The position numbers and the translations under genes were made by a program. From Octopus sinensis (taxonomy: Eukaryota): a stretch of 64,000 nt of DNA. The notes below the pieces were generated by a model. The model was given only the letters and a program-made list of their open reading frames with translations, made no database searches and had not been told where the DNA came from. The stretch covers positions 27,094,001 through 27,158,000 of the forward strand of contig NC_043020.1 in NCBI RefSeq assembly GCF_006345805.1, in the 5' to 3' direction. Position 1 is the first letter of the stretch; the number at the start of each line of letters is the position of its first letter. This document shows positions 1 through 52,238 of this stretch, piece after piece.

Positions 1-35
1 GTTTAGCCCCTTGTGGGTAGTAAAGAAATAGGTAT
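1..35 (+). mobile_element. 3' tail of a SINE family B copy (truncated by window start)
   Basis: gtttagccccttgtgggtagtaaagaaataggtat matches the tail of the other B copies. Confidence 0.85.
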
Positions 36-3563: not shown

Positions 3564-3594
<31 letters not shown>

Positions 3595-3765
3595 ATATAT
3601 GTATATATATATATATGTGTGTATATATGTATATATATGTGTGTATATATATATGTATATATATGTGTGTGTGTATTATATATGTATATATGAGTGTGTT
3701 AGTATATATAAATGTATGTATGAATATGTCTGTGTATCTGTGTGTCTATATATATGTATATTATA

Positions 3766-3808
<43 letters not shown>

Positions 3809-3824
3809 TATATATATATGTGTA

Positions 3825-3862
<38 letters not shown>

Positions 3863-4029
3863 GTGTATATATATATATATAGTGTATATATATATATGTG
3901 GTATATATATATATATGTGTATTATATATATATATATATATGTATGTATATATATATATATATATGTGTATATATATAATATGTGTATATATATATATAT
4001 GTGTATATATATATATTGTATATATATAT

Positions 4030-4093
<64 letters not shown>

Positions 4094-4221
4094 ATATATA
4101 TATATTGTGTATATATATATATATATATGTGTATATGTATATTATATATATGTGTGTATATATATATATATGGTATATATATAGTGTATATATATATATA
4201 TATATGTTATATATATATGTG

Positions 4222-4252
<31 letters not shown>

Positions 4253-4650
4253 GTGTATATATATATATGTGTATATATATATATATATGTGTGTATATAT
4301 ATATATGTGTATATATATATATGTGTATATATATATAATATGTGTATATATATATGGTATATATATATATAGTGTATATATATATATGTGTATATATATA
4401 TATAGTGTATATATATATATATATAATATATATGTATATATATATATATATATGTGTGTATATATATTATATGTGTGTATATATTATATGTGTATATATA
4501 ATATATATATGTGTGTATATATATATTATATATGTGTGTATATATATATATATGTGTATATATATATATATATATGTGTATATATATATATATGTGTATA
4601 TATATATATATATGTATGTATTTACATATATGTATATACACACACATGCT
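3530..4650. repeat. About 1.1-kb compound (TA)n/(TG) microsatellite
   Basis: Direct reading; source of the YIYI pseudo-ORFs. Confidence 0.97.
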
Positions 4651-7960: not shown

Positions 7961-10565
7961 CATGTACGACGGGTTTCTTTCAATTTCCATCTACCAAATC
8001 CACTCAAAAAGCTCTTTGGTCTGCCTAGCGCTATACGAGAAGACGTTTGCCCAAGGTATCATGCAGTGGGACTGAACCTGAAACCCATATGGTTGGGAAG
8101 CCAACTTATACACATAGCCATACCTACATACTTGTATATATTTTACTCTTTTACTTATTTCAGTCATTTGACTGTGGCCATGCTGAAGCACCGCCTTTAG
8201 TCAAGCATATCGACCTCGTGACTTACTCTTTGTAAGCCTAGTACTTATTCTATCGGTCTCTTTTGCCAAGTTACAGGGCTGTAAACACACCAGCATAGGT
8301 TGTCAAGTGATGTTGGGGGGACAAACAGAGACACACCAACATATATATATATATATATACACACACGACACGCTTCTTTCAGTTTCCGTCTACCAAATCC
8401 ACTCACAAGGCTTTGGTTGGCCTGAGGCTATAGTAGAAGACACTTGCGCAAGGTGCCACGCAGTGGGACTGAACATGGAACCATGTGGTTGGGAAGCAAG
8501 CTTCTTATCACACAGCCACTGTAATATATATATATATATTACGTCGTCCTGTTTTCCGTCCTTGTTTTGTATACATTCGAGGCTTTCTTCCGAGGAATCT
8601 AATGCACTTGGCTTAGATTTTCCTTTGGGGCTGGCCAGATCGGAGCAATCTCAAGATTAATCAGCCGAAATTGCGAAGATGATCCGGTTCTTGACTGAAG
8701 ATTGAAGGCTTCGAATGTCCCGTCCGTGTTTTTTGTATCGTCTTCTAAATGTTTTGCGTTCCTGTCCCAGTTTGTATTTTTTTACATATACATACATATA
8801 TATATGTATATATATATGTGTGTGTGTGTGTATGTATATATATATATATATACACATACATACATATATTTTTTACATCTGCTTTTCCGTCTTAGCATAG
8901 GTGATTGGACATGTTTTTCTTTTTGGCATTATTTGTCATGCTGACAGATGTCTCCCTCACTTCTTTCCAGTTTTTTCCTTATTCTCAACATTCAGCAGCC
9001 TTGTCTTTCTAGAGTGGCATTGTAGGGTAGGTGTGAGAGGCCAGGTCTGGCTGGTTCAGGCATAAAACAGGTAGAATATTTGGGCAAGACATAGCCAGTT
9101 TAAATTCTAAAGCAGTGGTTCCCAAACTTTTGGGGCTGCTGCCCACTTGGAACCCAGGCCACACTCCTTGTGCTGTCCCCCCCTTCTCCACCACCTCCAC
9201 TGCAAACACAGACCAGTTTCTGCGGCAAATTCTAAAACAAATGCATTTCACGAATAATGCTTAACCGAATTAAGCCATTATTTTGTTTTTACGTAACATC
9301 GCCCCCTTTTGGCTACCCCATTTATCACCTCCACTTTTCTTCAGCCCCTCCTTGGATCTTTCCACAGCCCCCAGCGGGTCAGCACCACAAAATAGGGTTA
9401 GACACAATCACACAGCCTCCTCTTCACTCAGAAAGCTTTTATAGTTTTTGCCCTTATTATGGATGGCTATTATTGCTTTCAGAGCATCCACCTCCACTGG
9501 TCAGTGTGGTCACCTCAGTTATTGGTTATCAGCTACTTCTGAACGGTTACTCTTTTACTTGTTTCAGTCATTTGACTGCGACCATGCTGGAGCACCGCCT
9601 TTAGTCGAGCAAATCGACCCCGGGACTTATTCTTTGTAAGCCCAGTACTTATTCTATCGGTCTCTTTTTGCCGAACCGCTAAGTGATGGGGGCGTAAACA
9701 CACCAGCATCGGTTGTCAAGCAATGCTAAGGGGACAAACACATACACACACACATATATATATACGACAGGCTTCTTTCAGTTTCCGTCTACCAAGTCCA
9801 CTCACAAGGCATTGGTCGGTCCGGGGCTATAGCAGAAGACACTTGCCCAAGATGCCAGGCAGTGGGACTGAACCTGGAACCATGTGGTTGGTTAGCAAGC
9901 TACTTACCACACAGCCACTCCTGCGCTTGATAAATTTAATTTCTGGAGTTCTCCCTACTCCTAGCTGCTCTGGAGCTTCTGTTACATGTGAAATCCTTCT
10001 ACATCAACCTACTTGAGATCCATCCCTCTGAAGCTTCTGTGTAGCCATTGTATGTATTAGGTGGACACCATTGAGAGGTCATCCTGCTCTCTGTATGTCA
10101 CCCTGTAGTAGTTCTGTTGTTTGTTTGTTTTTTGGGGGTTTTTTCTCATTTTTCTAAGACATGTTTCCTAAATCAACCTATGGCCCCCTTCTGAATCCTA
10201 CACCCTGCTTTCATGCTTGAAACCTATTTTCTAATTTTTCATTCGCACACAAAGTGCCTGTATATGTCTATATATACTTATGTGTATATTTGTGCGTGTG
10301 TATATGTGTACACATACATACTTATATGTGTGTGTGTGCAAAATAAAAAGAACAAGTTGAAAATGCGCAAAATTTACATATGTTTGGAATATCTTGTGTA
10401 TATAGTTACAAGTATGATTGTTGCTTTTTAGCTTAGAGCTCCATGTAAACGATCATCATCTAGTCTGCTTCCAGTTTAGTTGTGTGGTTACCACTGTACC
10501 TAGTCGTATTACTGGTTATGTAGGAGAGATTAGGATACAGACTTGTGCTTATCGTAAATTCTTAT

Positions 10566-10755
10566 ATACCTATTTCTTTAATACCCACAAGGGGCTAAAC
10601 ACAGAGGGGACAAACAAGGACAGACATAGGTATTAAGTCGATTATATCAACCCCAATGCGTAACTAGTACTTAGTTTATCGAACTCGAAAGGATGAAAGG
10701 CAAAGTCGACCTCGGCGGAATTTGAACTCAGAACGAAATATTGCCCGGCGTATAC
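10566..10755 (-). mobile_element. SINE family B monomer; other monomers at 12434-12668 (-), 24605-24835 (+), 29238-29466 (-), 51653-51876 (-, 15-bp TSD acctaggaccatata), 58390-58550 (-)
   Basis: About 230-bp element: head ggcgagctggcagaaacgttagc (A-box-like), gagttcaaattcc (B box), gcctttcatcctttcggggtcgataaattaagtaccag core, tail gtagtaaagaaata. Confidence 0.9.
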
Positions 10756-12127
10756 CATCATCATCATCATTTAACATCTGCTTTCCATGCTGGCATGGGT
10801 TGGACAGTTTGATCAGAACTGGCAAGGCCAAGAGCCTGGTTTCCACATGGTTTCTACATCTTGATGCCCTTCCTAATGCCAACCACTTTACAGAGTGTAC
10901 TGGGTTGTTTTTTTATGTGGCACTATCACCATCAAGATCACAAAATACCTTGTAACGCCAAAAAAAAACCCTCGGTTGAGAGTGAGGAGTGGGGATTAGT
11001 ATTGAGGTGGCAGGTGATTTTGTGCCATTTGAAAAATTAAAGGTATAGGGAGTGGAGATAGGTGTCTTGTTTTATTTATATATATATTTATATGTATGTA
11101 TGATCGGATATTGATTGATTTTCGTTTGCTTTACTCTCTGCCTGTGTGATTAAACTTTAAGTATTTTGGGTTCTCTGGAAGACCCTTTTTAAAGTAGAAG
11201 AAATGGCTAAGATTTTGGCTGCTATTTCTGAACTTCGGTATGCGGTGAAGCAATTCTTTTGCTGAACCCTTTTATTAGTATTAGTATTACTAAAATTTAC
11301 CGTGTTAGCGGTCCTGTTTTCATACCGAATTCTACTTGGTAAAATTTATTGATTACTTCTTAATTAATTAATTTTACCCTTTGATATTATATATATGTAT
11401 GTATATATACACACATACATACACACAATGGGCTTCTTCAGTTTCCATCTGCCAAATCCACTCACAAGGCTTTGGTTGGCCCAAGACTATAGTAGAAGAC
11501 ACTTGCCCAAGGTGCCAGACAGTGGGACTGAACCCGAAACCATGTGGTTGGTAAACAAGCTTCTTATCACACATAAAGCAAATTTTACTTTTTAAAATAG
11601 GTGTAAATAGTTCTCTGTATGTGAAAATAAAGATTCGAAATTATGTTTTACTGCAAAAAGAAAAATATTTTCACAAGGTGAGTTTAACACAAAGGGAAAG
11701 GTGAAATTTTACTGAAAAATTATCAGACACATACAGTTTGCATATAAACAAAGTTTCCATGTAGAAAAATACATAAAAACAAATGTTTTTTTTTTATAAA
11801 AAGAAGTTTTACTGAATAAATTTAAGCACACATAACCAACAGATTGTGTGTGTGTGTGTAATTTATACATACACCATAATTGCATATCAATAAATATTAA
11901 TTGGGTTTTCCTATCCATAGTAACACCGATATTTGATCTATGGTAGTTAATTAGTATCATGATTGGCATTTTGGTAGTTGAAGAAAAAAAGTTTTATTTT
12001 TTTAATGTTCATGTATTGAAGTAAAACTTTGAACATGTAAGTTTATTTATACTTTAATATAAATTTTAATATAAAATTGTTCTCCTCTTTTCTCTGTGTC
12101 AAATCTTAAACTTTAAACAGAAATACC

Positions 12128-12402: not shown

Positions 12403-12436
<34 letters not shown>

Positions 12437-12968
12437 TTCTTTACTACCCACAAGGGGCTAAATATAGAGGGGACAAACAAGGACAGACAAATGGATTAAG
12501 TCGATTACATCGACCCCAGTGCGAAACTGGTACTTTATTTATCTACCCCGAAAGGATGAAAGGCAAAGTCTACCTCGGCGGAATTTGAACTCAGAACATA
12601 ACGTTAGACGAAATACCGCTAAGCATTTCGCCCGGGGCGCTAACGTTTCTGCCAGCTCGCCGCCTTATGTATATATATATACGACGAGCTTCTTTCAGTT
12701 TCCGTCTACCAAATCCACTCACAAGGCTTTGGTCGGCCCGAGGCTACAGTAGAAGACACTTGCCCAAGGTGCCACGCAGTGGGACTGAACCCGGAACCGT
12801 GTGGTTGGTAAGCAAGCTACTTACCACACAGCCACTCCTGCGCCTATTTATTTATTTTATATATTTATTTTATTATAAATGCAAAAACAACACTATGCTT
12901 AAATAATAAACCCTAAGCTTAAATGATAAACCACGATGGGTGAACTGTGATATGGCAAGGGATTACTG
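12128..12968. mobile_element. Tc1/mariner (Tigger-like) MITE interrupted by SINE A, itself interrupted by SINE B; uninterrupted relative at 54732-54928
   Basis: Ends (c)cctaatcccttgagtatcg... and ...gggattactg|ta; 54732 copy has ta|cagtgatcct...gggattactg. Confidence 0.6.
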
Positions 12969-13878: not shown

Positions 13879-15373
13879 TGAAACTTCTGAAAAGCATATT
13901 TCTCATGAAACTATAGAAGCCGTGTGTTTTAAATAATTTAGAATAATCAACTCATTTCTCCAGTATTCAAATTAGTTGCGAATCACCATCATCATCATCA
14001 TCATCATCATCATAATGTGCACTTTTCCATGATTGCATGGGTCAGACAGAGCAGGTTGAAACAGATTTTCTGTGACTGGATGTCCTTCCTGTTGCCAGTC
14101 CTCACCTGTTTCCAAGCAAGATAGACCTGGAAGACTGGAAACAAAAAAAAAAACATTGCTTGTATGATGGTAATGCTCATTTACAAATGCCCCTAACATC
14201 AAGACAAAGCTGCACAGAAATGCACACATATGTACAAGCGTCTTTCAGTTTCTGTCTACCAAATCCTCTCCCAGTGAGGCTTTGGTCAGCTCTTGGTCAA
14301 GGTGCTATGCAGTGCTAGTGAACCCGAAACCATATGGTCAGGAAACAGACTTCTCGACCATACAGCCACAGCTGCACCTATGACATATTTTAAAACACAT
14401 CATCATCATTGTTTAATGTCCATTTTCCATGCTAGCATGGGTTGGACGGTTCGACCGGGGTCTGTGAAGCCAGAAGGCTACACCAGGCTCCAGTCTGATC
14501 TGGCAGTGCTTCTACAGCTGGATGCCCTTCCTAATGCCAACCACTCCGCGAGTGTAGTGGATGCTTTTTACATGCCACCGGCACAGGTGCCAGACGAGGC
14601 TGGCAACGGCCACGTTTGGTTGGTGCTTTTTATGTGCCACTGGCACAGAAGCCACATTCAGCCACATTCAGATGGTGCTTTTTACGTGCCACCGGCACAG
14701 GGATCACAACTACAATTTCCATTGATTTTTGATGTTGATGTACTTGACTCAATAGGTCTCCTCAAGCACAGGGTCGAAACGGTGTTTCTTTACTTGCCAC
14801 TTGCATGAAATTTCGTTTGAGATATTTTAAAACAATCAGCTTTGGACAAGCGAACCAGAGGAAGTTTCTGCTCTCTAGCAAGTTGGTATCAAAAGCGCCA
14901 TAAAACTGGTTTGTATTTAGTATATAAATCATTATACCGATGTCTAACGTCTACATCACCATTGATTATACACTATATACTCTGCTGTTTGTCAATGTTA
15001 CAGCTCTTTGTATCATATCATCCACCATACCTGCACTGACATCAACCAGTTATATATTACATACTTTAGAAACCAAACTATGTAATATGTGTCTTTTAGT
15101 TTTTCCATTTTCTATGGATTCTCTTGATTTCAACAATGTACTTGATATTCTGCGAACTAGAACAAACACCAACAAAGCGTTTTACTCAGTGCCCTGCTCT
15201 ATTGATTCTACTAATTTACCCTTTTTTTTAGTATTGTTTTGTAATTATTATTATTCACTTATTTACGGTCACTTGCAATTCTCTCCATCTTCCTTGATTT
15301 TTCTGCTTAAATGTTTGGCGCTAATGAAGCTCAGGTGTGTTTGTGTGAGGCTGGATTTTGAAAAATAATTAAC

Positions 15374-15748
15374 ATAGGCGTAGAGGTGGCTGTGTTGTAA
15401 GTAGCTTGCTTACCAACCACATGGTTCCGGGTTCAGTCCCACTGCGTGGCACCTTGGGCAAGTGTCTTCTACTATAGCCTCGGGCCGACCAAAGCCTTTG
15501 TGAGTGGATTTTGTAGGCAGAAACTGAAAGAAGCACGTCGTATATATGTGTTTGTGTTTGTCCCCCCAACATCGTTTGACAACCGATGCTGGTGTGTTTA
15601 CGTCCCCATAACTTAGCAGTTCGGCAAAAGAGACCGATTGAATAAGTACTAGGCTTGCAAAGAATAAGTCCTGGGGTCAATTTGCTCAACTAAAGGCGGT
15701 GCTCCAGCATGGCCACAGTCAAATGACTGAAACGAGTAAAAGAGTAAA
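15374..15748 (+). mobile_element. SINE family A, plus strand; also 26341-26750, 47715-47995 (partial), 59989-60398
   Basis: Reverse complement of the minus-strand A copies. Confidence 0.9.
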
Positions 15749-19024: not shown

Positions 19025-19250
19025 TATGTGTGTCTGTATGTATATATTATGTATACATGCATGTGTATGTCTTCTTATGTATGTGTGTGTGTGTGTCTAT
19101 ATCTATGACATGTAGACATGTAAATGTGTATATATATGTTGGTTTTTGGGCGATCTTAATGGTGAATCCTCGAAATATTTTGTCAATCTGTCATGCATAT
19201 ACAGACGTACTTAGATATGTGTGTATGTATGTATAACCTATAGCACCATG

Positions 19251-20045
19251 AAGGTGGCGAGCTGGCAGAAACGTTAGCTTGCTGGGCGAAATACTTAATG
19301 GTATTTCGTCTGCCGTTACGTTCTGGGTTCAAATTCCGCCGAGGCTGACTTTGCCTTTCATCCTTTCGGGGTTGATAAATTAGTACCAGTTACGCACTGG
19401 GGTTCGATGTAATCGACTTAATCTGTTTGTCTGTCCTTGTTTGTCCCCTCTGTGTTTAGCCCCTTGTGGGTAGCAAAGAAATAGGTATTTTGTCTGCCGC
19501 TACGTTCTGAGTTCAAATTCCGCCGAGGTCGACTTTGCCTTTCATCCTTCCGGGGTTGATAAATTAAGTACCAGTTACGCACTGGGGTCGATGTAATCGA
19601 CTTAATCCATTTGTCTGTCCTTGTTTGTCCCCTCTGTGTTTAGCCCCTTGTGGGTAGTAAAGAAATAGATATTTCGTCTGCCGCTACGTTCTGAGTTCAA
19701 ATTCCGCCGAGGCCAACTTTGCCTTTCATCCTTCCGAGGTTGATATATTAAGTACCAGTTATGCACTGGGGTCGATGTAATCGACTTAATCCATTTGTCT
19801 GTCCTTGTTTGTCCCCTCTGTGTTTAGCCCCTTGTGGGTAGTAAAGAAATAGATATTTCGTCTGCCGCTACGTTCTGAGTTCAAATTCCGCCGAGGCCAA
19901 CTTTGCCTTTCATCCTTCCGAGGTTGATATATTAAGTACCAGTTATGCACTGGGGTCGATGTAATCGACTTAATCCATTTGTCTGTCCTTGTTTGTCCCC
20001 TCTGTGTTTAGCCCCTTGTGGGTAGTAAAGAAATATATATATATA
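19251..20045 (+). repeat. SINE B tetramer: one head plus four 184-bp units, with a 19-bp TSD
   Basis: Units start at 19300, 19484, 19668, 19852; tataacctatagcaccatg at 19232-19250 and 20046-20064. Confidence 0.93.
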
Positions 20046-20439
20046 TATAACCTATAGCACCATGTGCACTTGTGACAAGTCACGCAACGTGGTGGGGGAA
20101 AATGGGACGACTCCTAAAGATCAGAAGCTAAAAGCTCAGAGCGGATGTGGAACAAAGTCAGGAATGACAGACATGTGTGGGATTTAAAAATAGAAAAACC
20201 TTGTGCTACTAGGAGATAAAATTTCCATTATGTTCCTGGCAGAGGAGTACAATGGAGGCTACCGAACAAAAGCAAAATACAATGTAATGTAGATTTGTGT
20301 GTGTGTGTTTGTGATCAGGTAAAGTTTAAATCAGTAGGGGTCTGACACTAATTCAAATGTGTTTTAAATATGTTTTGATATCAACCGTCTGGGACTTCGT
20401 GTACTAAACTGGTATGTGTTGAAAGTAAATTATATATAT

Positions 20440-24600: not shown

Positions 24601-25661
24601 CAATTCTCGGCAGAAACGTTAGCACGCCGGGAAAAATGCTTAGCGGTATTTCGTCTGCCGTTACGTTGTGAGTTCAAATTCCGCCTAGTTCGACTTTGCC
24701 TTTCATCCTTTCGGAGTCGATAAATTAAGTACCAGTTACACACTGGGGTCAATGTAATTGACTTAATACCTATGTCTGTCCTTGTTTGTCCCCTCTGTGT
24801 TTAGCTCCTTGTGGGTAATAAAGAAATAGGTATTTGGCTTGATTGGGGTCTCTGAAGCCTTTCATCTGTCTACAGCTAGTTTTCTTAAAACATCACCAGG
24901 TTACAGATTGTAGTAGCTTGGTAAATGCCCTTCTCCAGATCAGCTAAAGCCCCCCACACACACAACACAGACTTCAAAATTATGTTAACAATATTTAGCA
25001 TTTGTAAAGAATAAAAAGTTTCGAATGGTACAACAATGGGCTATATCTCTTTCTCTTTTACTTGTTTCAGTCATTTGACTGCGGCCATGCTGGAGCACCG
25101 CCTTTAATCGAGCAAGTCGACCCCAGGACTTATTCTTTTGTAAGCCCAGTACTTATTCTGTCGGTCTCTTTTGCCGAACCGCTAAGTAACGGGGAGATAA
25201 ACACACCAGCATCGGTTGTCAAGCAATGCTAGGGAGACAAACACATTCACGCATATATACGACGGGCTTTTTTCAGTTTCCGTCTACCAAATCCACTCAC
25301 AAGGCTTTGGTCGGCCTGAGGCTATAGTAGAAGACACTTGCCCAAGATGCCACGCAGTGGGACTGAACCCGGAATCATGCGGTTGGTAAGCAAGCTACTT
25401 ACCACACAGCCACTCCTGCACCTATATACCTGTTGTAATTTAGTCAGTCATAGTCTGATGATATTTTGGAATAAAATTCCTTCAGATATTCCGATTATAG
25501 CAGTGACTTCATCTAAGAATATCTGAAGAAGGAATTTTATTCCGAAATATATCAGACTATGGACGACTAAATTACAACAGGTATATAGCCCATTGTCTGT
25601 ATTATAGTGCATGGTAGGGAAGTAAGCTTCTTAACTGTGTCTTTCGTAAGCTTTCTTAACA

Positions 25662-26096: not shown

Positions 26097-26508
26097 GTGT
26101 GTGTAGAATATTGAATTTTTTTAGTGGTTCAATAAATAGCTTCTTTGGGTAAACATGCCTTGGTGGGTAGAAATCTTCACCTTTACCATGACTAGTCTGT
26201 TGCCTCGGTAACTGATAACCTAATTTATACAATAGTAGAGACATAACTCTTGACCTACTAACTCATTTGGTATTTGGATGTACAAACAAGAACGAGGAAA
26301 AATACGTTATATCTGTGTTATTGTCATTATATATATATATATAGGTGCAGGAGTGGCTGTGTGGTAAGTAGCTTGTTTACCAACCACATGGTTCCGGGTT
26401 CAGTTCCACTGTGTGGCACCTTAGGCAAGTGTCTTCTACTATAGTCTCGAGCCGACCAAATCCTCGTGAGTGGATTTGGTAGACGGAAACTGAAAGAAGC
26501 CCGTCGTA

Positions 26509-26553
<45 letters not shown>

Positions 26554-27288
26554 CTGTGTTTGTCCCCTAGCATTGCTTGACAACCGATGCTGATGTGTCT
26601 ATGTCCCCGTTACTTAGCGGTTCGGCAAAAGATATTGATAGAATAAGTACTGGGCTTACGAAAGAAATAAGTCCCGGGGTTGAGTTGCTCGATTAAAGGC
26701 GGTGCTCCAGCATGGCCGCAGTCAAATGACTGAAACAAGTAAAAAGAGTGTATATATATATATATAAGCACCACCTTCATAATACATAGCATGCATTTTT
26801 GTGTGGATGCATACACGCATATGAAAAACAGGTTCTCTTTTTACAAAAATGAGTTGTAGTTTTAATTCTTGGGCGTTTTTTGTTGTTATTATTATTATTT
26901 AAGATTTTTCTCATATTACTTTCTTGGATTAACAATGTTATCAGTGTTTGTAAATCATAAGCAAACAACCTTAAAAGTTCTATGCATAGAAAACTGGGTA
27001 AACTCTGTTGCATTGGACAGACATGTATCACAGTCTCTCAGTGTTTGACTATGCTTCTACAAGCACAAGATATTGCGTCATATAGCACATCACAAAACCT
27101 AACCGAAAATTAATCTTGTGATAAACAATATACCCCCAGCAAATACTAGACTAGTCACATGAGCTATATTGTTATTAGTAAAATGTAATACAGCATATTT
27201 GGTGATATGGTGACCTGCATTGAAAACACAAGTTTGCATTCCTGCTTTTTACTTTGTGTTTAATGGTGGAATTGGAGCTAAAATTTCT

Positions 27289-28489: not shown

Positions 28490-29076
28490 ATGTCGGACCC
28501 AAATGACCAACTTCATCCGAACATACCACCACCACCTCCTCCACCACAATATATGAACACAGCGGTAGCTGCCGTTACTGCTGCTGGTCTTGTAGGCCCT
28601 CCACCACCAGCTGCCATCGTTGGCACCGTGGGCACTTTCAACAACTATCGTCCTGCGGTCGCAGTCAATTCGGTCGCTGTGAACGCTGTCGGTGTGGTCA
28701 GTGGTGTCGGCGGTGCGGTCATCGCAACAGGTGGCTACAGGACCGACTACAATGACGCCTACCGGGGCGACTACGGCGCTGCCACCAGCTGCCCGCCGCC
28801 TGTCATCCCTGTCGGCCTCGTGGCGGGCAGCAACAACCTCGTCACCGCCGCCGCCAGCACTGCCATCACCGCGCCGACGTCGGGGAACACCGTCAGTCCT
28901 CCGCCGCCGCCGCCACCTGCTGTCGCCAACCCTGCCACCACCACTAGCACGAGTGGCAACAGTAACGCTGGTTACGACACCGGCTACTGCGAGAGTGACT
29001 ACCGAGACGACTATAACTACGAGGACAGACATGGCTACCGAAAGGACTCGGAGTTCCGGGATAGAGACAGGGACAG
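28490..29076 (+). CDS. RBM5: RBM5/10 coding exon 1: Pro/Ala/Val-rich N-terminus with DYR-type motifs (exon starts 28472)
   Basis: Acceptor ttcccttctag at 28471, ATG at 28490, donor AG|gtaagg after 29076 (phase 2); matches ORF 28490..29080. Confidence 0.85.
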
Positions 29077-29551
29077 GTAAGGGCCCTTTTTTTTCCCATC
29101 TTATATGCATTAGGGCAATCAGCTCACAATCATAAGGTCATCAGTTCAATTCCCGGCAGTTCATTGTGTCCTTGAGCAAGACACTTAATTTCACGTTGTT
29201 CCAGCTCACCCAGCTGGCAAAATTCAATTGTACCTGTTTCTTTATTACCCACAAGGGGCTAAACATAGAGGGGACAAACAAGGACAGACAAAGGTATTAA
29301 GTTGATTACATCGCCCCAGTATGTAACTAGTACTTAATTTATCGACCCCGAAAGGATGAAAGGCAAAGTCAACCGCGGCGGAATTTGAACTCAGAACGTA
29401 ACGGCAGACGAAATACCGCTAAGCATTTCGCTCAACGTGTTAACGCCTTTGCCAGCTCACCGCCTTTTAACAATTCACTTGTACCTGTAATTCAAAGGGT
29501 CAGCCTTGTTACACTCTGTGTCATGCTGAATCTCTCTGAGAACTACATTAA

Positions 29552-33125: not shown

Positions 33126-36100
33126 GTGAGTGTTTTTTTTTCCTTTTTCATGTTATTTCATTTATTTTTCATAGATAAATTTATAAACAAATCTACTCAC
33201 TGAGGGGGTTCTGAGAATATTGAAACATATATATATGTATATATTATATATATATTTATTATATGATATATTTATATATATCTATATATAATATATGTAT
33301 GTGTATCTTGTATAAAATTGAAGGTGTGTTTTGTTGGATTTTTTAATGTATGTATGTATATATATATATATATATCTATATATATATTATTTTTTCTTTG
33401 TAAACTATGTTGGCTTTATTCACCAGGGTCTTTATTATTATTATTGTTATTATTATCTTGTAAAAGTTCTTGAATATATGATATGTAACCAAACTAATCT
33501 TCTCTTATTCACAGCTGTTTATCTTTGGAAGTCTTGTATAGTTAATCTGTTATGATATGTATTGATATCTGCCTTCATGAAATCACTGTCTTCTAATCTT
33601 GGTTTATACTCTTCACTGATTCACCTGTCTTCAGTGTTTTGAGATTGAGCCGGTTTTTACCTTTGCAAAACGGTGCTATTGTTGTTGTTGTTTAACCCTT
33701 ACACTGCTCCTGCTTGGGCAAACATTGTTTTAGTCATTACTACTTCCTTTGTTGTTTTCAAACATAGTGTATCTAAGACAATATTGTTGAGTGTATCTTG
33801 TTTTTTTGCTGCTGTTTCATATATATATATATATATTATATTAAATTAGCTGTGACACTAAGATGCTTTCATATACACCTTCTCCCTATATCTGTGTGTA
33901 AGTTCTTTTATTTGTTTCAGTCATTTGACTGCGGCCATGCTGGAGCATTGCCTGTAGTCAAACAAATCGGCCCCAGGACTTGTTCTTTGTAAGCCTAGTA
34001 CTTATTCTATCGGTCTCTTTTGCCGAACCGCTGCATTACGGGGACATAAACACACCAACATCGGTTGTCAGATGATGGCGAGGGGACAAACACAGACACA
34101 TATATACACGACAGGTTTCTTTCAGTTTCTGGCTACCAAATCCACTCACTGGGCTTTGGTTAGCCCAAGGCTATAGTAGAAGACACTTACCTAAGGTCCC
34201 TCACAGTGGGATGAGAACTCAGGACCATGTGGTTGGTAAGTAAGCTACTTACCACACAGCCACTCCTGAGTAAGCACATGAATGTGAAACAAGGTGGGGA
34301 AAAATTAGTATTCGACTACCTGAAGTAGAGTGATATGCTTCGTTATTAAAGTTGTGAAAAAACATCACAGAAATATCACAAAAAACTGCTACTCAGAGTT
34401 TCGCGTTCCCATTTGTCAGCCAGTTGTGATTAAGAATTCTTATGTATATGTGTGTGTGTGGGGGGATACGAATTTAATTTTCTTATGCCAAAGTTTATGC
34501 ATAACAAATCATTGGCTATTTGGCTCATACTTAAGATCCCTGTATTGAGTATGTTGTGTCAAACCAACCCTGATGGAGCTGAGTGAGAGCATAACAAAAG
34601 GGCCCTTTTGTCCACTTAAGATGTTTTGTCTTTGGAAGTGCATATGTGGGTGTGCTCAGTTCTTTTATTGTCTTTGGTCATCAGCTGCCCCAGCAACAAT
34701 GCTTCTGCTGAATTACTATTCTCTACTAGTAAGGATTATCTGTTCCTATGTATAGTGGCTGTCTCTTCCCCACACCTCTTGTGTCTGTGCTTGGTCAAAT
34801 TTTCTGAAAGGTCTGAACTTTTATGGTTGTATTTAATAAATTTGTGCCTTTTATTTTCCTTCCACTTCCCAAAAGTCTTTGGTCAACTTCTGTTGTTGAA
34901 AAACCACCACCACGACCATCCCGCCCCACAGAGGCCAGATTTAGTGACTACACCCCCCCCCCAACCTAAATTGTGCATTTTTGCAGATAACCTTGTTAAC
35001 TCTTTAGCTTTCAGATTACTCTATCTGGCTTAATGCTTATTTATCCACATTGTTTTGAATTAATCCTGCATTATCTTATCACTTCCAAGAGTTTCATAAT
35101 CTGATTGTTTGTTTTAACAATGGCATTGTAGGACAGGTGTAAAATGTTGGATCTAGCCATTTTGAACATAAAAAAGGCAGATTATTTGGGCCAGATATGA
35201 CTGCTTTAGATACGAAGAAAATTAAGTTTTAATTGCTACTAAATTGGACAAACTTTCTGGTCTTTTGCCTAGAAACAAATGTATTAATATGAGGAAATTG
35301 CGATAAACTCCAAAATTGTGTGAAGGCCCCCCCCTCAGCTGTGGCATATTTCACTTTAGCTCCAATCCAGTCCTGCCCACCACTGTTATCTCTCTCATCA
35401 ACATCTCAATTATCTTGTTGTGAAGATACAGAGCTGAAGACACCTCCGAAAGGGGGTGGGGGGCACCACGTCAAAACGGTACAGGAGTAGGGGCCGAAAC
35501 CGGACATGGTTCCTCTTGATGATGTCTTGAGCTAACTGGATCCTATAAAGGAGCTGTTGTGGTAGCAGACCACGAAACACGGTTGTAATTCCTTCCTTAG
35601 AGTCTTTTTAAATTCTTGGCTTCTTATAATTCCTGGCTGGTCTCTTGTTCGAACTCAGGTGTTTTTTGTAAACAGAAATAATCCATTACTTTCACTTTCA
35701 GCTTATCAACGTCTGTTTTCTTCTGGTAAGTAATGGCAAGTTTGATGCTTGACTCGTCACTCTTTTACTCAATCCTACCTTAACGATGTATTCATTTGCA
35801 TTAACCATTTTTTATCATTTTGAACAGGATACTGCTGTTAGCTGTGTGTGTTCATTAGCACATCAATGTAAAGTGCTTTACAATCTGATCAGTTCATATG
35901 TAACAATTATTTTGTAGATACATTGATTATTCTGTTAGAATTTTAATTGCTTAATTAGTTAAAATGGGGGAAAAGATGAGAAATTTAAAGTGTAGGTATT
36001 TGATCCTGAAGCTCCTGTTCTGTATAAGATAATTGCTGCTTCCATGATTGGATCAAAACACCTTGAGTCTACACACCTGAAGACATCAAAGTGACCATGC

Positions 36101-43088: not shown

Positions 43089-44310
43089 TAATAAAAATCA
43101 TTAGTCTGTCCCTCCTACAATCCGTTTCTAGGGCATTCTTGTTGGGTTTTTTTTCCTCTCTCTCTCTCTCTCTCATTAGTCCCTTATTTCAATGAACTAA
43201 TTGAAATTTTTGTTCCAAACCATCCTAATTTATTTATTTAATGTGGATTCTATAGCAGTAAGCAACCAAATGTTTGTTCTTTGCAAAGCGAAATTGTGTC
43301 ATGGCTTCCCAGCAGAACTTGCACATGATTTCCTGTCTGTCATCTCTTTCTTCGTTCTGTGCTCTTCTGCCTCCTCCTCTTTTCATGCTACCACACCCCC
43401 AAACCCCATCTCACCACCTCAGCTCAGCTTTGCTCAGCTCCATTTTTTTTTTTTTTCTTTAATTTCAATGTCTTCCCTTGCCAGAGTTTTTTTTTTTTTT
43501 CCTTTTTTTTTCTTTTTAATCACCCTGCCAATTAATTCATTAATTAACTATGATGATGATGTTGATAGCTGCTATTATTAGTGCTCTCTTACTACTACTA
43601 CTATTACTACTACTGTCCTTCTGAAACTTCTAGTATAACTCACACACATATACACAACAACAATATCCATCTCCACACACACATACACCCTTATCACCAG
43701 TTCAGGGTTTCAAACCCTGTCGGTTGATATCTAGTTTTTTTTTCCCCCAAATATTTTAACAAGGGTTTTTTTTTCGTTTATAATTTTTTTCATACAATTT
43801 ATCAATTATTGGCTTAGATAGGAAATCATGCCTCGTTAGCTTAATAAATTATATTATATATATATATTTTAAAAAAAAGCAATTGTACATTTTTTTTCTT
43901 GATAGATTTTTTTTTAACCATAAACTTTTGTGTTTATTTCTACTTTAGAGATGTTACTGTTTTCTGTAGAATAAAAAAAAAAGAAAAAAATGAGAGAGAA
44001 AACATATGCATGTATATATATATATATGTATGTATATATATATATATATGTATGTATATGTGTGTATATATATATAGATATTTATATATATATATTTATA
44101 TGTTACTTGTATCTTTTGTCTACCTACATTGATATTAAGTACTACTACTACCTACTACTACTACTACTAGACGTCACGTTGACCTGAGGCTTCCGAAGAC
44201 ATACTTGATGTGTGTCCTGAACCTAGATCATGGCATTGGCAAAATGGATGATGTGTTGCTACCACATGGTTTCCGTTTCATTGATACTGACTTCCTTCTT
44301 TTGCTTCCAG

Positions 44311-44412
44311 GGGTCGCTCTACCTGCAGGACCAGTTCCATGTCACTATGCACTACAGTCAGCCCAAAATGGGGCCTGAGAAGGTACAGAAGTGTGACTGG
44401 GTTTGTACGAAG
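44311..44412 (+). CDS. RBM5: RBM5/10 coding exon 6: RRM1 end and first half of RanBP2 ZnF (MHYSQPK...DWVCTK)
   Basis: tactgac branch, pyrimidine tract and cag; AAG|gtaagt donor. Confidence 0.95.
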
Positions 44413-44667
44413 GTAAGTAAGGAGTGTGCCTTGTTTTTTGGGGGTTTTTTTGTGTTTTTTTTCACTTGTTTCAGTCATTTGACTGTGGCCATGCTGGAGC
44501 ACCGCCTTTAATCGAGCAAATCGACCCCGGGACTTATTCTTTTGTAAGCCCAGTACTTATTCTATCGGTCTCTTTTTGCCGAACCGCTAAGTGATGGGGA
44601 CGTAAACACACCAGCATCGGTTGTCAAGCAATGCTAGGGGGACAAACACAGACACACAAACACATAA

Positions 44668-44698
<31 letters not shown>

Positions 44699-45700
44699 CA
44701 TATATACGACAGGCTTCTTTCAGTTTCCGTCTACCAAATCCACTCACAAGGCATTGGTCGGCCCGGGGCTATAGCAGAAGACACTTGCCCAAGATGCCAC
44801 GCAGTGGGACTGAACCCGGAATCATGTGGTTGGTTAGCAAGCTACTTACCACACAGCCACTCCTGTGCCTATCTTTTATTTTCTTTATCTTTTTTGCTCA
44901 TACCACATAAAAGCACCTGGCACATTCTGTAAAGTGGTGGGCATTAGGAAGGGCATCCAGCTGTAGAAACCATGCTAAAACAGACGACTGGGGCCTGGTG
45001 CAGCTCACCAGCATATACAAAGGACGTTAAACGATGATGACTTGTTTTAGTCATTGGACTGTGGTCCAGAAGGGTTTTAGTCAAACAAATCGACCCTGGT
45101 GCTTATTTTTTTAACCCTTTAGCATTTAAACTGGTCATATCCAGCCCAAAATATCCTTCTTGTTTTGTGTTCAAACTATCCAGATCCAGCCTCTCGCACC
45201 TAACCTACTATGTCATTCTAAAAATAAACAATCACTTTTTCAAATATCTTAAGCTACAAGATAATACATGATTAATTCATAAAAATGCGAATAAATAAGC
45301 ATTATATTGGACACAATAATCTGGATGCTAAAGGGTTAAAGTCCGGGGCTTATTCTGTCGGTCTCTTTTTGCTGGACTGCTTCGTTACTGGGACGTAAAC
45401 AAACCAGTGTTTATTGTCAAGCCGTTAGGTTGTGGGGGACAAACACGCACCCACACATATCGCATGACCGGCTAGGCTATCAGATGTTGTTACACATTGC
45501 TGGTCACAATGCACTTTGCATCATTTTAGCCTTTGAATGGTGCCACCCACTGGCTAGGCGAGCAGAGCACCATTCCCCCCTTGATCAAAAGTGGGGTCTG
45601 CAGCAACATGAAATGAAGCATTCTGCTCAAGAACACAATTCGCTGCCCGATCTAGGAATTGATCCCATGATCCAGTGATCATGTGTGCAATAGCCTAACC

Positions 45701-46613
45701 TATTTCTTTACTACCCACAAGGGGCCAAACACGGAGAGGACAAACAAGGACAGACGAACGGATCAAGTCGATTATATAGACCCCAGTGCATAACTGGTAC
45801 CTAATTTATCGACCCCGAAAGGATGAAAGGCAAAGTCGACCTCGGCAGAATTTGAACTCAGAACGTAACGGCAGACGAAATACCTATTTCTATTTCTTTA
45901 CTACCCACAAGGGGCTAAACACAGAGGAGACAAACAAGGATAGACAGACGAATTAAGTCGATTATATCGACCCCAGTGCGTAACTGGTACCTAATTTATC
46001 GACCCCCGAAAGGATGAAAGGCAAAGTCGACCTCGGCAGAATTTGAACTCAGAACGTAACGGCAGACGAAATACCTATTTCTATTTCTTTACTACCCACA
46101 AGGGGCTAAACACAGAGGAGACAAACAAGGATAGACAGACGGATTAAGTCGATTATATCGACCCCCAGTGCGTAACTGGTACTTTATTTATCGACCCTGA
46201 AAGGATGAAAGGCAAAGTCGACCTCGGCAGAATTTGAACTCAGAACATAACGGCAGACGAAATACCTATTTCTATTTCTTTGCTACCCACAAGGGACTAA
46301 ACACAGAGAGGACAAACAAGGATAGACAAATGGATCAAGTCGATTATATCAACCCCAGTGCGTAATTGGTACTTTATTTATTGACCCCCGAAAAGATGAA
46401 AGGCAAAGTCGACCTCGGCGGAATTTGAACTCAGAACGTAGCGACAGACGAAATACTGCTCCCAGTGCGTAACTGGTACTTTATTTATCGACCCCCGAAA
46501 GGATGAAAGGCAAAGTCGACCTCGGCAGAATTTGAACTCAGAACGTAGCGACAGACGAAATACTGCTAAGCATTTCGCCTGGCTAACGTTTCTGCCAGCT
46601 CGCCGCCTTCACA
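45701..46613 (-). repeat. SINE B multimer: four units of about 190 bp, a partial internal duplication and one head, with a 13-bp TSD
   Basis: Unit tails start at 45701, 45891, 46082, 46273; partial repeat from 46460; caatagcctaacc at 45688-45700 and 46614-46626. Confidence 0.92.
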
Positions 46614-46763
46614 CAATAGCCTAACCACCGCACCACATTCCTTCACTATATACAAACTCTCTCTCTCTCTCTCTCAAGCACAAACACACATGTGTATATA
46701 TATGTATATCTACACATTTTAGAAAAATAGTTACTCATATTTTTAAAATTCTGTTCATTTCAG

Positions 46764-46824
46764 TGTGGAGCTCACAATTTCAAACGAAGAGATTTCTGTT
46801 TCCAATGCAGTGTGTCACGAGAAG
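46764..46824 (+). CDS. RBM5: RBM5/10 coding exon 7: ZnF second half CGAHNFKRRDFCFQCSVSRE
   Basis: tttcag acceptor, GAA G|gtaagc donor; 61 nt. Confidence 0.95.
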
Positions 46825-47366: not shown

Positions 47367-47426
47367 AATCAGAACGAGCCAAAGAAGGAGATGGATTTGA
47401 CCAAGTTGGAACAAACCCTTGCAATA
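47367..47426 (+). CDS. RBM5: RBM5/10 coding exon 8: linker ESERAKEGDGFDQVGTNPCN
   Basis: ttccag acceptor, AAT A|gtaagt donor, phase 1 to 1. Confidence 0.9.
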
Positions 47427-50874: not shown

Positions 50875-52238
50875 CATCACTGGTGATGAAGCAAGCAAGT
50901 ATATGCATGTCTGTTTCTTTGTGCCTTATGACTTAGGGAAGAGAGGGTGACAGCCCTGATCTTTTTTGTAGGGCATCCAGTGAACCAGGACATTGTATTA
51001 AAGCAAAGCAACAGATTGTGTTGACCGTCCAGCAACATGTGCAGTCTGTTCAACTGGTGTGTGTGTGTGTTTAGCTGCTGCTCTGTTCCAGTGGAACCAA
51101 GTTAGGTTTACAGTTGTGTGTGTTTGTCTGTGTGTCTCCTTATTTTGACTGCATAACGGTTGTGATTGAGTATCCTTAATTGCCAATCTTCAGTGAAAAC
51201 ATGTCTGGCTGCTGGTAAATATTTTTCTATGATCGGAAACAGTTAAGGCTTTGGTGACAAACCCAATGGTTTTCAACCAGGGTTCCACCAGTACAGTCCA
51301 GTGGGGTTCCACAAGAAGTTACAAAACTGCTAAAATCGGCCGTAATTTTTAATTCTCCTGTGCAGATATGTGTGCATAAGACTATTAAATTATTGCACAG
51401 GGGTTCCTCGAGCCAGTGGAATGTTTCCTTGGGGTTCCGCTCCCGCAAAAAGTTTGGAAAGCACTGATCTAACCACATTAAATCTGCCTTGGCAAATTCT
51501 CTCCAACCCCTGTGGAGCATGCGAAACTGGATGTTAAAAGACAACTGCAGTGTGAAGGGAGGTAATTCCAACTGAACTAAATAGCATCTTGTTTAATAGA
51601 AACACTTGCCACAGATAATGTTGTGTAGTGGAATCGAACCTAGGACCATATATATTTCTTTACTACCCACAAGGGGCTAAACACAGAGGGGACAGACAAA
51701 CGGATTAAGTCGGATTATATTGACCCCAGTGCGTAACTGGTACTTAATTTATCAACCCCGAAAGGATGAAAGGCAAAGTCGACCTCGGTGGAATTTGAAC
51801 TCAGAACGTAACGGCAGACGAAATACGGCTACACAGTTCGCCAAGCATGCTAACGATTCTGCCAGCTCGCCGCCTTACCTAGGACCATATAGTGATGAAA
51901 CATGCTTCATCGTCACACAGCTGTACCTGTGCCCTGTTAACAAATGTGAGGTTGATGCATTTAGTTCAGGCTCCAGACAACAATAAAAAATACTTGATTA
52001 TGGTACCACACTGGGACAGAACCCAAAACTACATGATTATGAACCAAAAATCATATCCCCATAGCCTTTTTATTTATTCCCATGCTTTAGTTCTTGGAGC
52101 CGAAGGACGATTGCATATAAATTTAGAAAATAAAACTCTAGGGTAGATCTTGTGGCTAATTAATGCCAAAGAAGCCATAGATTCCTGTCAGTGTGTTTAC
52201 TAATGAATGTTTGTCTGTTTTCTTATTGTTTTTCTCAG

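What the first reader, a model, noticed from the sequence alone, without database searches (positions are those of the whole stretch)
19232..20064. SINE-B concatemer 1: one promoter head, four headless units, one target-site duplication
Seen: a 49-nt head carrying the A-box-like motif is followed by four units at an exact 184-bp period. Each unit begins at the internal site G(G/A)TATTT(C)GTCTGCC, so each has the B box but no A box. The block ends in a (TA)n tail and is enclosed by a single 19-bp TSD. Units 3 and 4 look identical, and units 2-4 share variants absent from unit 1. The same architecture recurs independently at 45701-46613. Inference: a repeatable multimerisation route exists for this SINE. 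Options are (a) a multimeric or circular RNA template copied by the partner LINE RT, as in non-LTR retrozymes, (b) RT slippage back to the tail through the GGTATTT microhomology, or (c) stepwise unequal exchange after insertion. The gradient of shared variants favours (c) or gene conversion, but does not explain why both arrays use the same junction.
Basis: partly seen in the sequence, partly recalled or inferred. Interest (0 to 1): 0.75.

Follow-up and report, generated by a model that had tools for sequence, protein, structure and literature searches.

The report
Tandemly amplified octopus SINE, one insertion
One inserted copy of a short octopus retroposon has had its 184-bp rear part copied head-to-tail to four units, a structure already described for SINEs in clams and reptiles; the one notable detail is that two separate arrays are joined at exactly the same internal point, the loop of a strong hairpin.

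Summary
At 19232-20064 a 49-nt head is followed by four units of exactly 184 bp and a (TA)5 tail, all inside one perfect 19-bp target-site duplication. Units 3 and 4 are identical.

A second array lies on the minus strand at 45688-46626. It uses the same junction but has a 191-bp period, an extra 107-bp partial duplication, a 13-bp duplication and no TA tail.

No ribozyme or tRNA model matches either array, so the circular-RNA or retrozyme reading has no support.

Divergence between units is hierarchical, and array 2 units are mosaics. Growth from two to four units therefore happened stepwise in the DNA by unequal exchange.

The founding junction joins the exact SINE 3' end (GAAATA) to the first base of the 3' arm of a predicted 12-bp hairpin. 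Three of seven monomers are followed by the same GGTAT. I infer, without proof, that the junction formed during reverse transcription or was inherited from a multimeric source copy.

The same architecture, TSD-(SINE)n-TSD with head-truncated inner units, is published for the clam Scapharca broughtonii, and SINE-derived satellites are published for squamates. This is a new member of a known kind. No further octopus DNA of the window's species was reachable, so the genome-wide census remains undone.

The parts
19232..19250 (+). Array 1, 5' target-site duplication TATAACCTATAGCACCATG
   Evidence: Identical to 20046-20064.
19251..19299 (+). Array 1 head, 49 nt. It holds the A-box-like TGGCGAGCTGG at 19255-19265, the 5' arm of the hairpin and the hairpin loop.
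   Evidence: The head pattern occurs only at full-length copies.
19284..19311 (+). Predicted 12-bp hairpin resembling an anticodon arm (element positions 34-45 paired with 50-61, loop 46-49). The unit boundary 19299|19300 is the loop/3'-arm boundary.
   Evidence: Folding of the array 1 head (-39.5 kcal/mol, z=-3.4) and of the family consensus both give this hairpin.
19300..19483 (+). Array 1 unit 1 (184 bp), contiguous with the head, so head plus unit 1 is a complete monomer. It is the most divergent unit.
19484..19667 (+). Array 1 unit 2 (184 bp, headless). It carries a T4 run at 19488 created by a C>T change.
19668..19851 (+). Array 1 unit 3 (184 bp, headless).
   Evidence: Identical to unit 4.
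19852..20035 (+). Array 1 unit 4 (184 bp, headless).
   Evidence: Identical to unit 3.
20036..20045 (+). Array 1 (TA)5 tail.
20046..20064 (+). Array 1, 3' target-site duplication.
46614..46626 (-). Array 2, 5' TSD GGTTAGGCTATTG. It is followed by four extra bases, TGTG, at 46610-46613.
46568..46609 (-). Array 2 head.
46461..46567 (-). Array 2 extra 107-bp partial copy (P1). It starts AGCAGTATTT, inside the hairpin loop, and ends CACTGGG. It differs from its twin at 46354-46460 at 4 of 107 positions.
   Evidence: TRF period 107 x2 at 96%.
46267..46460 (-). Array 2 unit 1, continuous with the head through P1. It is the most divergent unit.
46076..46266 (-). Array 2 unit 2 (191 bp).
45885..46075 (-). 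Array 2 unit 3 (191 bp).
45701..45884 (-). Array 2 unit 4 (184 bp, a single GAAATA at its end).
45688..45700 (-). Array 2, 3' TSD. It is part of a host tRNA-like SINE into which the array inserted.
12434..12666 (-). Full-length SINE-B monomer with a (TA)n tail, used as reference.
29237..29466 (-). Full-length monomer with TSD CAGGTACAA(G/T)TGAATT.
51653..51876 (-). Full-length monomer with TSD TATATGGTCCTAGGT, nested in another tRNA-like SINE.
24609..24833 (+). 5'-truncated monomer whose GAAATA end is followed by GGTAT.
10566..10762 (-). 5'-truncated, internally deleted monomer whose end is followed by GGTATA. The same GGTATA stands at its 5' flank and is a probable TSD.
1..35 (+). 3' end of a monomer cut by the window edge, followed by GGTAT.

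Best explanation
Each array is one retrotransposition event of a tRNA-type SINE, shown by one pair of target-site duplications and one promoter head. Its rear 184 bp (B box, body and 3' end) has been multiplied head-to-tail. This happened in two phases.

Phase 1, inferred. A founding dimer junction joined the exact 3' terminus of the SINE (...AAAGAAATA) to element position 50, the first base of the 3' arm of a strong 12-bp hairpin in the tRNA-like head.
- The left side is the point where the partner LINE's reverse transcriptase starts. The right side is where a hairpin can re-zip and peel off the nascent cDNA end (...GAAATACC-3').
- That cDNA end is complementary to the GGUAU that follows GAAAUA in many copies.
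- I therefore think the junction was made by template switching during target-primed reverse transcription, either at these loci or earlier in a multimeric source copy that was then transcribed through and re-inserted. The consensus unit has no T4 terminator.

Phase 2, shown. The dimer grew to four units at different times by homologous unequal exchange or replication slippage in the DNA. This also shuffled variants between units.

The array is a by-product with no evident function. It is a SINE-derived minisatellite.
For: One insertion:
- Perfect 19-bp (array 1) and 13-bp (array 2) TSDs enclose each whole array. A head is present only at the 5' end.

Stepwise DNA-level growth:
- Array 1 pairwise substitutions are u3-u4 0, u2-u3 7, u1-u2 9, u1-u3 12. 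P(0 differences | mean 7) = 0.0009.
- u2-u4 share derived columns 66, 116 and 179, and u3/u4 share six more.
- Array 2 distances run from 5 to 19. They do not fit equal-age units: P(<=5 | 18) = 0.0003.
- Array 2 columns 132 and 134 split the units 12|34. Columns 174, 181, 200 and 201 split them 14|23. One mid-unit unequal crossover on a trimer reproduces this pattern.
- The 107-bp partial duplication has a right end (CACTGGG) that is not a SINE terminus. It is younger than the u1/u2 split: 4 differences against about 10 expected, P = 0.02.

Founding junction tied to retrotransposition:
- In both arrays the left side is the exact family 3' end defined by monomer TSDs, with no tail and no TSD inside.
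- Array 1 shows no DNA microhomology between the internal site (AATGG|TATTT) and the flank (GAAATA|TATATA) that could yield the GG of the junction.
- The right side is to the base the loop/3'-arm boundary of a 12-bp hairpin.
- AAAGAAATAGGTAT also ends 3 of 7 monomers, and their downstream flanks are not decayed units.

Precedent: the same TSD1-(SINE)n-TSD1 layout is described in Scapharca broughtonii (PMC11481361).
Against: - Only two arrays and seven monomers were available. No genome-wide census was possible (all returned nothing).
- Phase 1 is inference. No 5'-truncated monomer starts at position 50 and no head-only fragment ends at 49 in the window. A strong reverse-transcriptase stop there would predict both.
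- Array 1 ends in (TA)n, not GGTAT, so the acceptor RNA in the switch model is hypothetical.
- In array 2 a 3-nt microhomology (GGT in both the unit start and the 3' flank) would also allow a DNA-level origin.
- The 107-bp duplication shows that the hairpin loop is a breakpoint in an event that has nothing to do with the SINE 3' end. This favours a DNA-level hairpin hotspot.
- Both arrays having four units is unexplained.
- The identity of u3 and u4 could be an assembly artefact.
Confidence: 0.55

Rival explanations
1. Purely DNA-level origin. The founding duplication also arose after insertion. Replication stalled or switched template at the extruded 12-bp hairpin, with or without a few bases of microhomology. 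Ordinary unequal exchange then followed.
For: - The 107-bp duplication in array 2 starts in the same hairpin loop (3 nt upstream) but ends at an internal, non-terminal site. The loop is therefore a breakpoint independent of retrotransposition.
- In array 2 the unit start and the 3' flank share GGT.
- Other recent tandem duplications exist nearby, for example 486 bp x2 at 55103-56096.
- The bivalve authors propose recombination for their arrays.
Against: - In both arrays the other breakpoint falls exactly at the SINE 3' terminus, before the tail or TSD. That is an unlikely coincidence for random breakage.
- Array 1 has no usable microhomology.
Confidence: 0.25
2. A multimeric (dimeric or longer) SINE-B variant is itself a source gene. 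It is transcribed from the single head through all units and retrotransposed as a block, so the junction is shared by descent.
For: - The consensus unit has no T4 terminator. The only T4 runs are single derived mutations.
- Both arrays have four units and the same junction.
- Unit 1 of both arrays alone carries GTAGCAAAG (column 228).
- The CCGCT variant (column 66) occurs only in the two arrays.
- GGTAT after monomer ends would follow if reverse transcription started at inner tails of multimeric transcripts.
Against: - Units are no more similar to the same-rank unit of the other array than to other units.
- Two shared sites are within chance expectation (about 0.45 expected).
- Column 66 has the opposite unit distribution in the two arrays.
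- Junction lengths differ (184 against 191).
Confidence: 0.2
3. The whole tetramer was made in a single target-primed reverse transcription by three successive template switches. Later gene conversion produced the gradient.
For: - One TSD, a head only on the last-copied unit, and an exact junction at the reverse-transcription start site.
- Template jumps by LINE reverse transcriptases are documented, as in U6/L1 chimeras and tripartite chimeras (titles: PMC4476161, PMC2104539).
Against: - Unit ages are clearly unequal: 0, 7, 9 and 12 substitutions in array 1 and 5 to 19 in array 2. Extra DNA-level events are needed anyway.
- Two tetramers with no dimers or trimers among about nine loci fits a geometric switching process poorly.
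Confidence: 0.1
4. In-register nested insertion. The partner endonuclease prefers GGTAT-like sites, so a new SINE-B inserted at position 50 of an older copy. The 5' end of its cDNA was resolved by homology with the old copy, leaving head, new unit and old unit without an inner TSD. This is the double-insertion route to tandem transposable elements.
For: - TSDs or 3' flanks start GGTAT, GGTATA, GGTATT, GGTT, CAGGTA or TATA.
- SINE-B inserts into other SINE heads.
- The middle units of array 2 lack two rare variants shared by its first and last units (columns 174, 201).
- Double insertion is a documented source of TE dimers (PMC5932611).
Against: - No example with a retained inner head or inner TSD is seen.
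- All three junctions of array 2 carry the same doubled GAAATA.
- The identity of u3 and u4 still needs DNA duplication.
Confidence: 0.1
5. Rolling-circle reverse transcription of a 184-nt circular RNA, as in non-LTR retrozymes.
For: The unit length and the TSD-flanked tandem layout resemble metazoan retrozymes.
Against: - No hammerhead or other ribozyme was found at E<=10 in either array on either strand.
- No CUGANGA core is present.
- A headless circle cannot give the head.
- Units are of unequal age.
Confidence: 0.02
6. Assembly artefact: the units are over-expanded by the assembler.
For: Units 3 and 4 are identical.
Against: Units 1, 2 and 3 differ from each other at 7-12 sites. All array 2 units differ. 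The TSDs are intact.
Confidence: 0.03

Closest known systems
TSD1-(SINE)n-TSD1 tandem SINE arrays in the blood clam Scapharca broughtonii (Martelossi et al., Mob DNA 2024, PMC11481361)
   Same: - The first SINE has a complete tRNA-related head.
- Inner repeats are truncated in the tRNA head and lack the tail.
- The last repeat has a complete tail.
- One TSD pair encloses the array.
- Arrays lie in introns and have 4-15 units.
   Different: - The host is a cephalopod, with a different SINE family.
- The breakpoint is mapped here to the loop of a 12-bp hairpin and to the exact 3' terminus.
- Two arrays share it to the base.
- Whether the clam arrays share junctions between loci is not stated in the text I could read.
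SINE-derived satellites (sSat) of squamate reptiles (Vassetzky et al., Mob DNA 2023, PMC10702118)
   Same: Tandem repeats of part of a SINE, with a longer terminal unit reaching the SINE terminus. The same unit structure recurs at many loci, and short loci have variable units.
   Different: sSats reach up to about 1000 units and sit near telomeres. TSDs are not discussed in the paper. Here there are only four units, in euchromatic intron or upstream DNA, with clear TSDs.
LINE reverse-transcriptase template-switch chimeras (U6/L1 and related; PMC4476161 and PMC2104539 listed; R2 template jumping from my own knowledge of Bibillo and Eickbush 2002)
   Same: A single TSD around two or more RNA copies joined head-to-tail. 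The junction lies at the 3' end of the acceptor RNA.
   Different: Donor and acceptor would here be the same SINE, giving homo-multimers. This is not demonstrated.
Double insertion route to tandem transposable elements (McGurk and Barbash, Genome Res 2018, PMC5932611)
   Same: TE dimers act as seeds that unequal exchange then expands.
   Different: That route leaves full elements and inner target duplications. Here the inner units are head-truncated in register.
Metazoan non-LTR retrozymes (from my own knowledge of Cervera and de la Pena 2020)
   Same: TSD-flanked tandem repeats of about 170-400 bp.
   Different: No self-cleaving ribozyme is detectable here.

Membership tests
tRNA-type SINE | Internal Pol III promoter (A and B boxes) in a tRNA-derived head | tested here: inconclusive
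   An A-box-like (C/T)GGCGAGCTGG and a B-box-like GTTCAAATTCC are present. ARAGORN finds no tRNA, and the Rfam tRNA model does not match at E<=10.
tRNA-type SINE | Dispersed copies of 100-500 bp, each with its own variable TSD | tested here: met
   Nine loci in 64 kb. TSDs of 13-19 bp differ at each locus.
tRNA-type SINE | 3' end shared with a partner LINE | not testable with these tools
   No LINE with this 3' end is in the window, and no octopus genome collection is searchable.
TSD-(SINE)n-TSD tandem SINE array / SINE-derived satellite | Complete head only on the first unit; inner units truncated in the head at one common position | tested here: met
   The head pattern occurs once per array. 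All inner units start at element position 50.
TSD-(SINE)n-TSD tandem SINE array / SINE-derived satellite | One TSD pair around the whole array, none between units | tested here: met
   19/19 and 13/13 matches at the outer edges. The junctions read GAAATA|GGTATTT with no flank sequence.
TSD-(SINE)n-TSD tandem SINE array / SINE-derived satellite | Tail only on the last unit | tested here: met
   In array 1 the (TA)5 tail follows unit 4 only. Array 2 has no simple-repeat tail at all.
Non-LTR retrozyme | Hammerhead (or other) self-cleaving ribozyme in every unit | tested here: not met
   cmscan at E<=10 of both arrays on both strands gave no ribozyme family. No CUGANGA core is present.
Non-LTR retrozyme | Circular RNA of unit length | not testable with these tools
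   This needs RNA data.
Multimeric SINE amplifying as a block (Alu-like) | Many loci with the same unit number and rank-specific diagnostic differences, each with its own TSD | tested here: inconclusive
   Two loci, both with four units and the same junction. Only one rank-specific shared site was found (column 228), and distances show no rank affinity.
One-step RT template-switch concatemer | All units of equal age at insertion | tested here: not met
   Pairwise substitutions range 0-12 in array 1 and 5-19 in array 2. Equal-age Poisson tests are rejected.

The most novel reading that the evidence does not exclude
SINE-B concatemerises during reverse transcription. The 12-bp anticodon-like hairpin re-zips behind the enzyme and frees the cDNA end ...GAAATACC-3'. 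That end re-primes on the GGUAU at the 3' end of another SINE-B RNA. Multimeric copies would then arise repeatedly, and could be transcribed through and serve as source genes. This would be a defined RNA-level route from SINE to satellite seed.
Probability: 0.3. Interest if true: 0.55.

Novelty: new member of a known kind. Interest (0 to 1): 0.33.

Why it matters
How dispersed retroposons turn into tandem repeats and satellites is only partly understood. SINE arrays inside a single target-site duplication have been reported descriptively in a clam and, as SINE-derived satellites, in reptiles.

This octopus case adds base-level anatomy:
- The same junction occurs in two independent insertions.
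- One side of the junction is the exact reverse-transcription start point.
- The other side is the loop boundary of a strong hairpin.
- There are clear marks of later stepwise unequal exchange.

If a genome-wide census confirms a fixed junction, the family would be a tractable model for the seeding step of SINE-derived satellites. If not, it is an ordinary local duplication.

The arrays also matter for annotation. They inflate SINE counts, and one lies 135 bp upstream of an exon of an RBM5-like gene.

Tried and rejected
1. Protein search with the 54-aa antisense ORF that spans the unit junction, meant to pull other multimers from public assemblies. No candidate was found.

2. Exact scans of metagenome and viral contig collections for the SINE core. 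Both returned 0 hits.

3. Fetching orthologous loci.
- The RBM5-like exons led to O. bimaculoides CM046624.1 (L001).
- The window is 85-92% identical to L001 in non-coding DNA, so it comes from another Octopus species.
- L001 covers only window positions 34.9-63.9 kb.
- The 1.8-kb block holding array 2 and its host SINE is missing there. The block holding monomer 51653 is also missing.
- No clean empty site for SINE-B alone could be shown.

4. Reaching the array 1 orthologous site through the upstream exon-like ORF 28490-29080. The HMMER search of 1.84 billion representatives gave 0 hits.

5. Cluster member P0011 led to three metagenome contigs with LTR-retrotransposon genes (L002-L004). I judged them irrelevant from their gene content and did not compare them with the window.

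6. Retrozyme or ribozyme reading. Rejected.

7. The idea that GGTAT after monomer ends marks decayed second units. Rejected, because downstream flanks do not align to the unit.

8. Simple homologous exchange between the tail GAAATA and the head GAAAT(A/G). Rejected, because it would keep the loop bases CTTAAT/CTTAGC, which the junction lacks.

9. Microhomology between the (TA)n tail and the internal TAT in array 1. Rejected, because it cannot produce the GG of the junction.

10. Literature search for octopus or cephalopod SINE multimers and for the SINE sequence itself. Nothing was found.
Full report
**What is there**

- Tandem Repeats Finder gives 19302-20040 with period 184, 4.0 copies, 96% matches and no indels.
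- A perfect 19-bp direct repeat, TATAACCTATAGCACCATG, stands at 19232-19250 and 20046-20064.
- The 49-nt head (19251-19299) carries an A-box-like TGGCGAGCTGG.
- Four units of exactly 184 bp start at 19300, 19484, 19668 and 19852. Each has the B-box-like GTTCAAATTCC. A (TA)5 tail follows.
- Units 3 and 4 are identical.
- Unit 1 is continuous with the head. The object is one complete 233-bp monomer plus three headless units.

The element is a dispersed family. BLAST of the monomer finds nine loci in the window. Three are full-length monomers with their own TSDs (12434-12666, 29237-29466, 51653-51876). The rest are truncated copies.

The monomer TSDs fix the family termini at AAGG(C/T)GG... and ...AAAGAAATA. 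ARAGORN and the Rfam tRNA model do not recognise the head. "tRNA-derived" therefore rests on box-like motifs only.

**The second array**

On the minus strand a 13-bp TSD (GGTTAGGCTATTG, 46614-46626 and 45688-45700) encloses a head and again four units. It differs from array 1 in four ways.
- Every internal junction reads GAAATAGAAATA|GGTATTTCG, giving a 191-bp period.
- There is no TA tail.
- Four untemplated bases follow the 5' TSD.
- The first 107 bp after the head are duplicated once more, with junction CACTGGG|AGCAGTATTT (TRF 46354-46567).

**Where the junction lies**

Folding the head, from both the consensus and array 1, gives a 12-bp hairpin: element positions 34-45 pair with 50-61, and the loop is 46-49 (array 1 head -39.5 kcal/mol, z=-3.4).
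- The unit begins at position 50, the first base of the 3' arm.
- The 107-bp duplication begins at position 47, in the same 4-nt loop.
- The left side of the 184/191-bp junction is the exact family 3' terminus, with no tail and no flank sequence.
- The word AAAGAAATAGGTAT occurs at all six junctions (one mismatch allowed) and also at the 3' end of three of seven monomers (0.04 expected by chance).
- The flanks after those three monomers are not decayed units.
- Other TSDs begin GGTT, CAGGTA or TATA.

GGTAT-like sequence is therefore associated with the priming site of this family, either as part of the RNA 3' end or as a target preference.

**Ribozyme or circle reading**

cmscan at E<=10 over both arrays, on both strands, gives only noise hits. 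No CUGANGA core exists on either strand. A headless circle could not supply the head. I reject this reading.

**Age structure**

- Array 1 pairwise substitutions are u3-u4 0, u2-u3 7, u1-u2 9 and u1-u3 12. The variant table gives the tree (u1,(u2,(u3,u4))), with one conflicting site at column 95. Zero differences is incompatible with equal age (P=0.0009 at mean 7).
- Array 2 distances run from 5 to 19 and are not additive on a star tree.
- The informative sites of array 2 split 12|34 in the 5' half (columns 132, 134) and 14|23 in the 3' half (columns 174, 181, 200, 201). Write the half-unit types as a/b and c/d. The array then reads ac-ad-bd-bc. This is what a single unequal crossover in mid-unit makes from a trimer ac-ad-bc.
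- The 107-bp twin copies differ at 4 sites. That is fewer than the roughly 10 expected if the duplication were as old as the u1/u2 split (P=0.02).

Growth therefore happened at several different times in the DNA, whatever made the first junction. In both arrays the head-proximal unit is about as far from the other units as unrelated monomers are. The first junction is thus about as old as the insertion.

**The founding junction**

A random DNA duplication would not place its breakpoint exactly at the SINE terminus in two independent insertions. In array 1, no microhomology between the internal site and the (TA)n flank can produce the observed GG. This points to the reverse-transcription start site.

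My preferred reading has four steps.
- The reverse transcriptase finishes the 3' arm of the hairpin.
- The hairpin re-forms and frees the cDNA end ...GAAATACC-3'.
- That end pairs with the GGUAU following GAAAUA on a second SINE RNA.
- Synthesis resumes, giving GAAATA|GGTATTT without extra bases.

It could have happened at each locus, or once in a source copy that is transcribed through. The consensus unit lacks a T4 terminator.

Several facts count against it.
- No 5'-truncated monomer starts at position 50 in the window.
- Array 1 ends in TA, not GGTAT.
- Array 2 has a 3-nt GGT microhomology with its flank.
- The 107-bp duplication shows the loop is also a breakpoint in an event unrelated to the SINE terminus.

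A DNA-level hairpin hotspot, a multimeric source gene and in-register nested insertion at a GGTAT target therefore all remain open.

**Context and comparison with another species**

- The window carries an RBM5-like gene on the plus strand.
- The O. bimaculoides orthologue (L001, CM046624.1) is 85-92% identical in non-coding DNA, so the window is from another Octopus species.
- Array 2 sits antisense in an intron, 135 bp upstream of the RanBP2 zinc-finger exon (46761-46823).
- Array 2 lies inside another tRNA-like SINE. The whole 1.8-kb block (44922-46717) is absent from O. bimaculoides.
- Monomer 51653 is likewise nested, and its block is absent too.
- The only SINE-B copy shared by both species is the old truncated one at 58390-58547.
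- The family was therefore active after the split. This agrees with a recent SINE wave reported for O. vulgaris (PMC13282606).
- The array 1 orthologous site could not be reached.

**Comparison with the literature**

- Martelossi et al. 2024 describe, in the clam Scapharca broughtonii, SINE multimers of the form TSD1-(SINE)n-TSD1. The first SINE has a complete tRNA head. Inner copies are truncated at both head and tail. The last copy has a complete tail. Arrays have 4-15 units, often in introns. This is the same architecture.
- Vassetzky et al. 2023 describe SINE-derived satellites in squamates. A longer terminal unit reaches the SINE terminus, and the same unit recurs at many loci.
- Both groups invoke recombination for expansion, and neither maps the seeding junction mechanistically in the text I read.
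- I found nothing on cephalopod SINE multimers.

**Verdict**

This is a new member of a known kind, with a neat base-level junction that deserves a genome-wide census. Interest is moderate to low.

Noticed in passing
window 22-35, 10566-10579 (-), 24820-24833: Three of seven SINE-B monomers are followed directly by GGTAT, the same bases that open each array unit. At 10571 the GGTATA is also present at the 5' flank and is a probable TSD. Either the RNA 3' end or the endonuclease target is GGTAT-like.
   Followed up: partly
window 46354-46567 (-): A 107-bp tandem duplication lies inside array 2. Its start is in the same 4-nt hairpin loop as the main unit boundary, but its end (CACTGGG) is internal. 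This suggests the hairpin loop is a general breakpoint.
   Followed up: partly
window 44922-46717 and 51596-51992: Array 2 and monomer 51653 are each nested in the tRNA-like head of a different SINE family. Both composite blocks are absent from the O. bimaculoides orthologue (L001 near 10260 and 14131-14138).
   Followed up: partly
window 44230-63806 (+), exons mapped: An RBM5-like gene. Array 2 lies antisense 135 bp upstream of the RanBP2 zinc-finger exon at 46761-46823. Upstream exon-like ORFs (28490-29080 and about 32.3 kb, with RRM-like LLRGLPNQIDEKD) are not in the O. bimaculoides gene model, which starts at about 44.2 kb.
   Followed up: partly
window 28490-29080 (+): A 196-aa Pro/Ala/Val-rich ORF starting MSDPNDQ has no hit at E<=0.001 among 1.84 billion representative proteins. 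It may be a lineage-specific low-complexity N-terminal exon, or not coding at all.
   Followed up: partly
window 55103-56096: A 486-bp unit is present twice at 99% identity, each copy opening with a (TA)n run. This looks like a recent tandem duplication, apparently by exchange between TA microsatellites.
   Followed up: no
window 3564-4638: A very long imperfect (TA)n tract of about 540 repeats. Many shorter TA tracts occur across the window.
   Followed up: no
window 63211-63407; also 8177-8526, 9582-9919, 15386-15713, 26352-26763, 33930-34264, 44488-44861, 57738-58087, 60000-60367: A second, more abundant repeat family of about 360 bp is shared with O. bimaculoides (L001 12013-12369). One stretch, 63211-63407, shows an internal 100-bp x2 duplication at 80% identity. 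I did not check whether that stretch belongs to this family.
   Followed up: no
SINE-B body, e.g. window 19345-19400: The body (GCCTTTCATCC...GGGGTCGATAAATTAAGTACCAGTTAC) recalls the CORE-SINE/MIR core from my memory. Octopus OR2 is listed as a CORE SINE (PMC4758252). This was not tested.
   Followed up: no
L002-L004 (JGI and ENA metagenome contigs): The 57-aa member (P0011) of the RBM5 90% cluster sits on contigs with LTR-retrotransposon gag and RT/RNase H genes. It looks like a spurious cluster member rather than octopus DNA, but I did not compare these contigs with the window.
   Followed up: no
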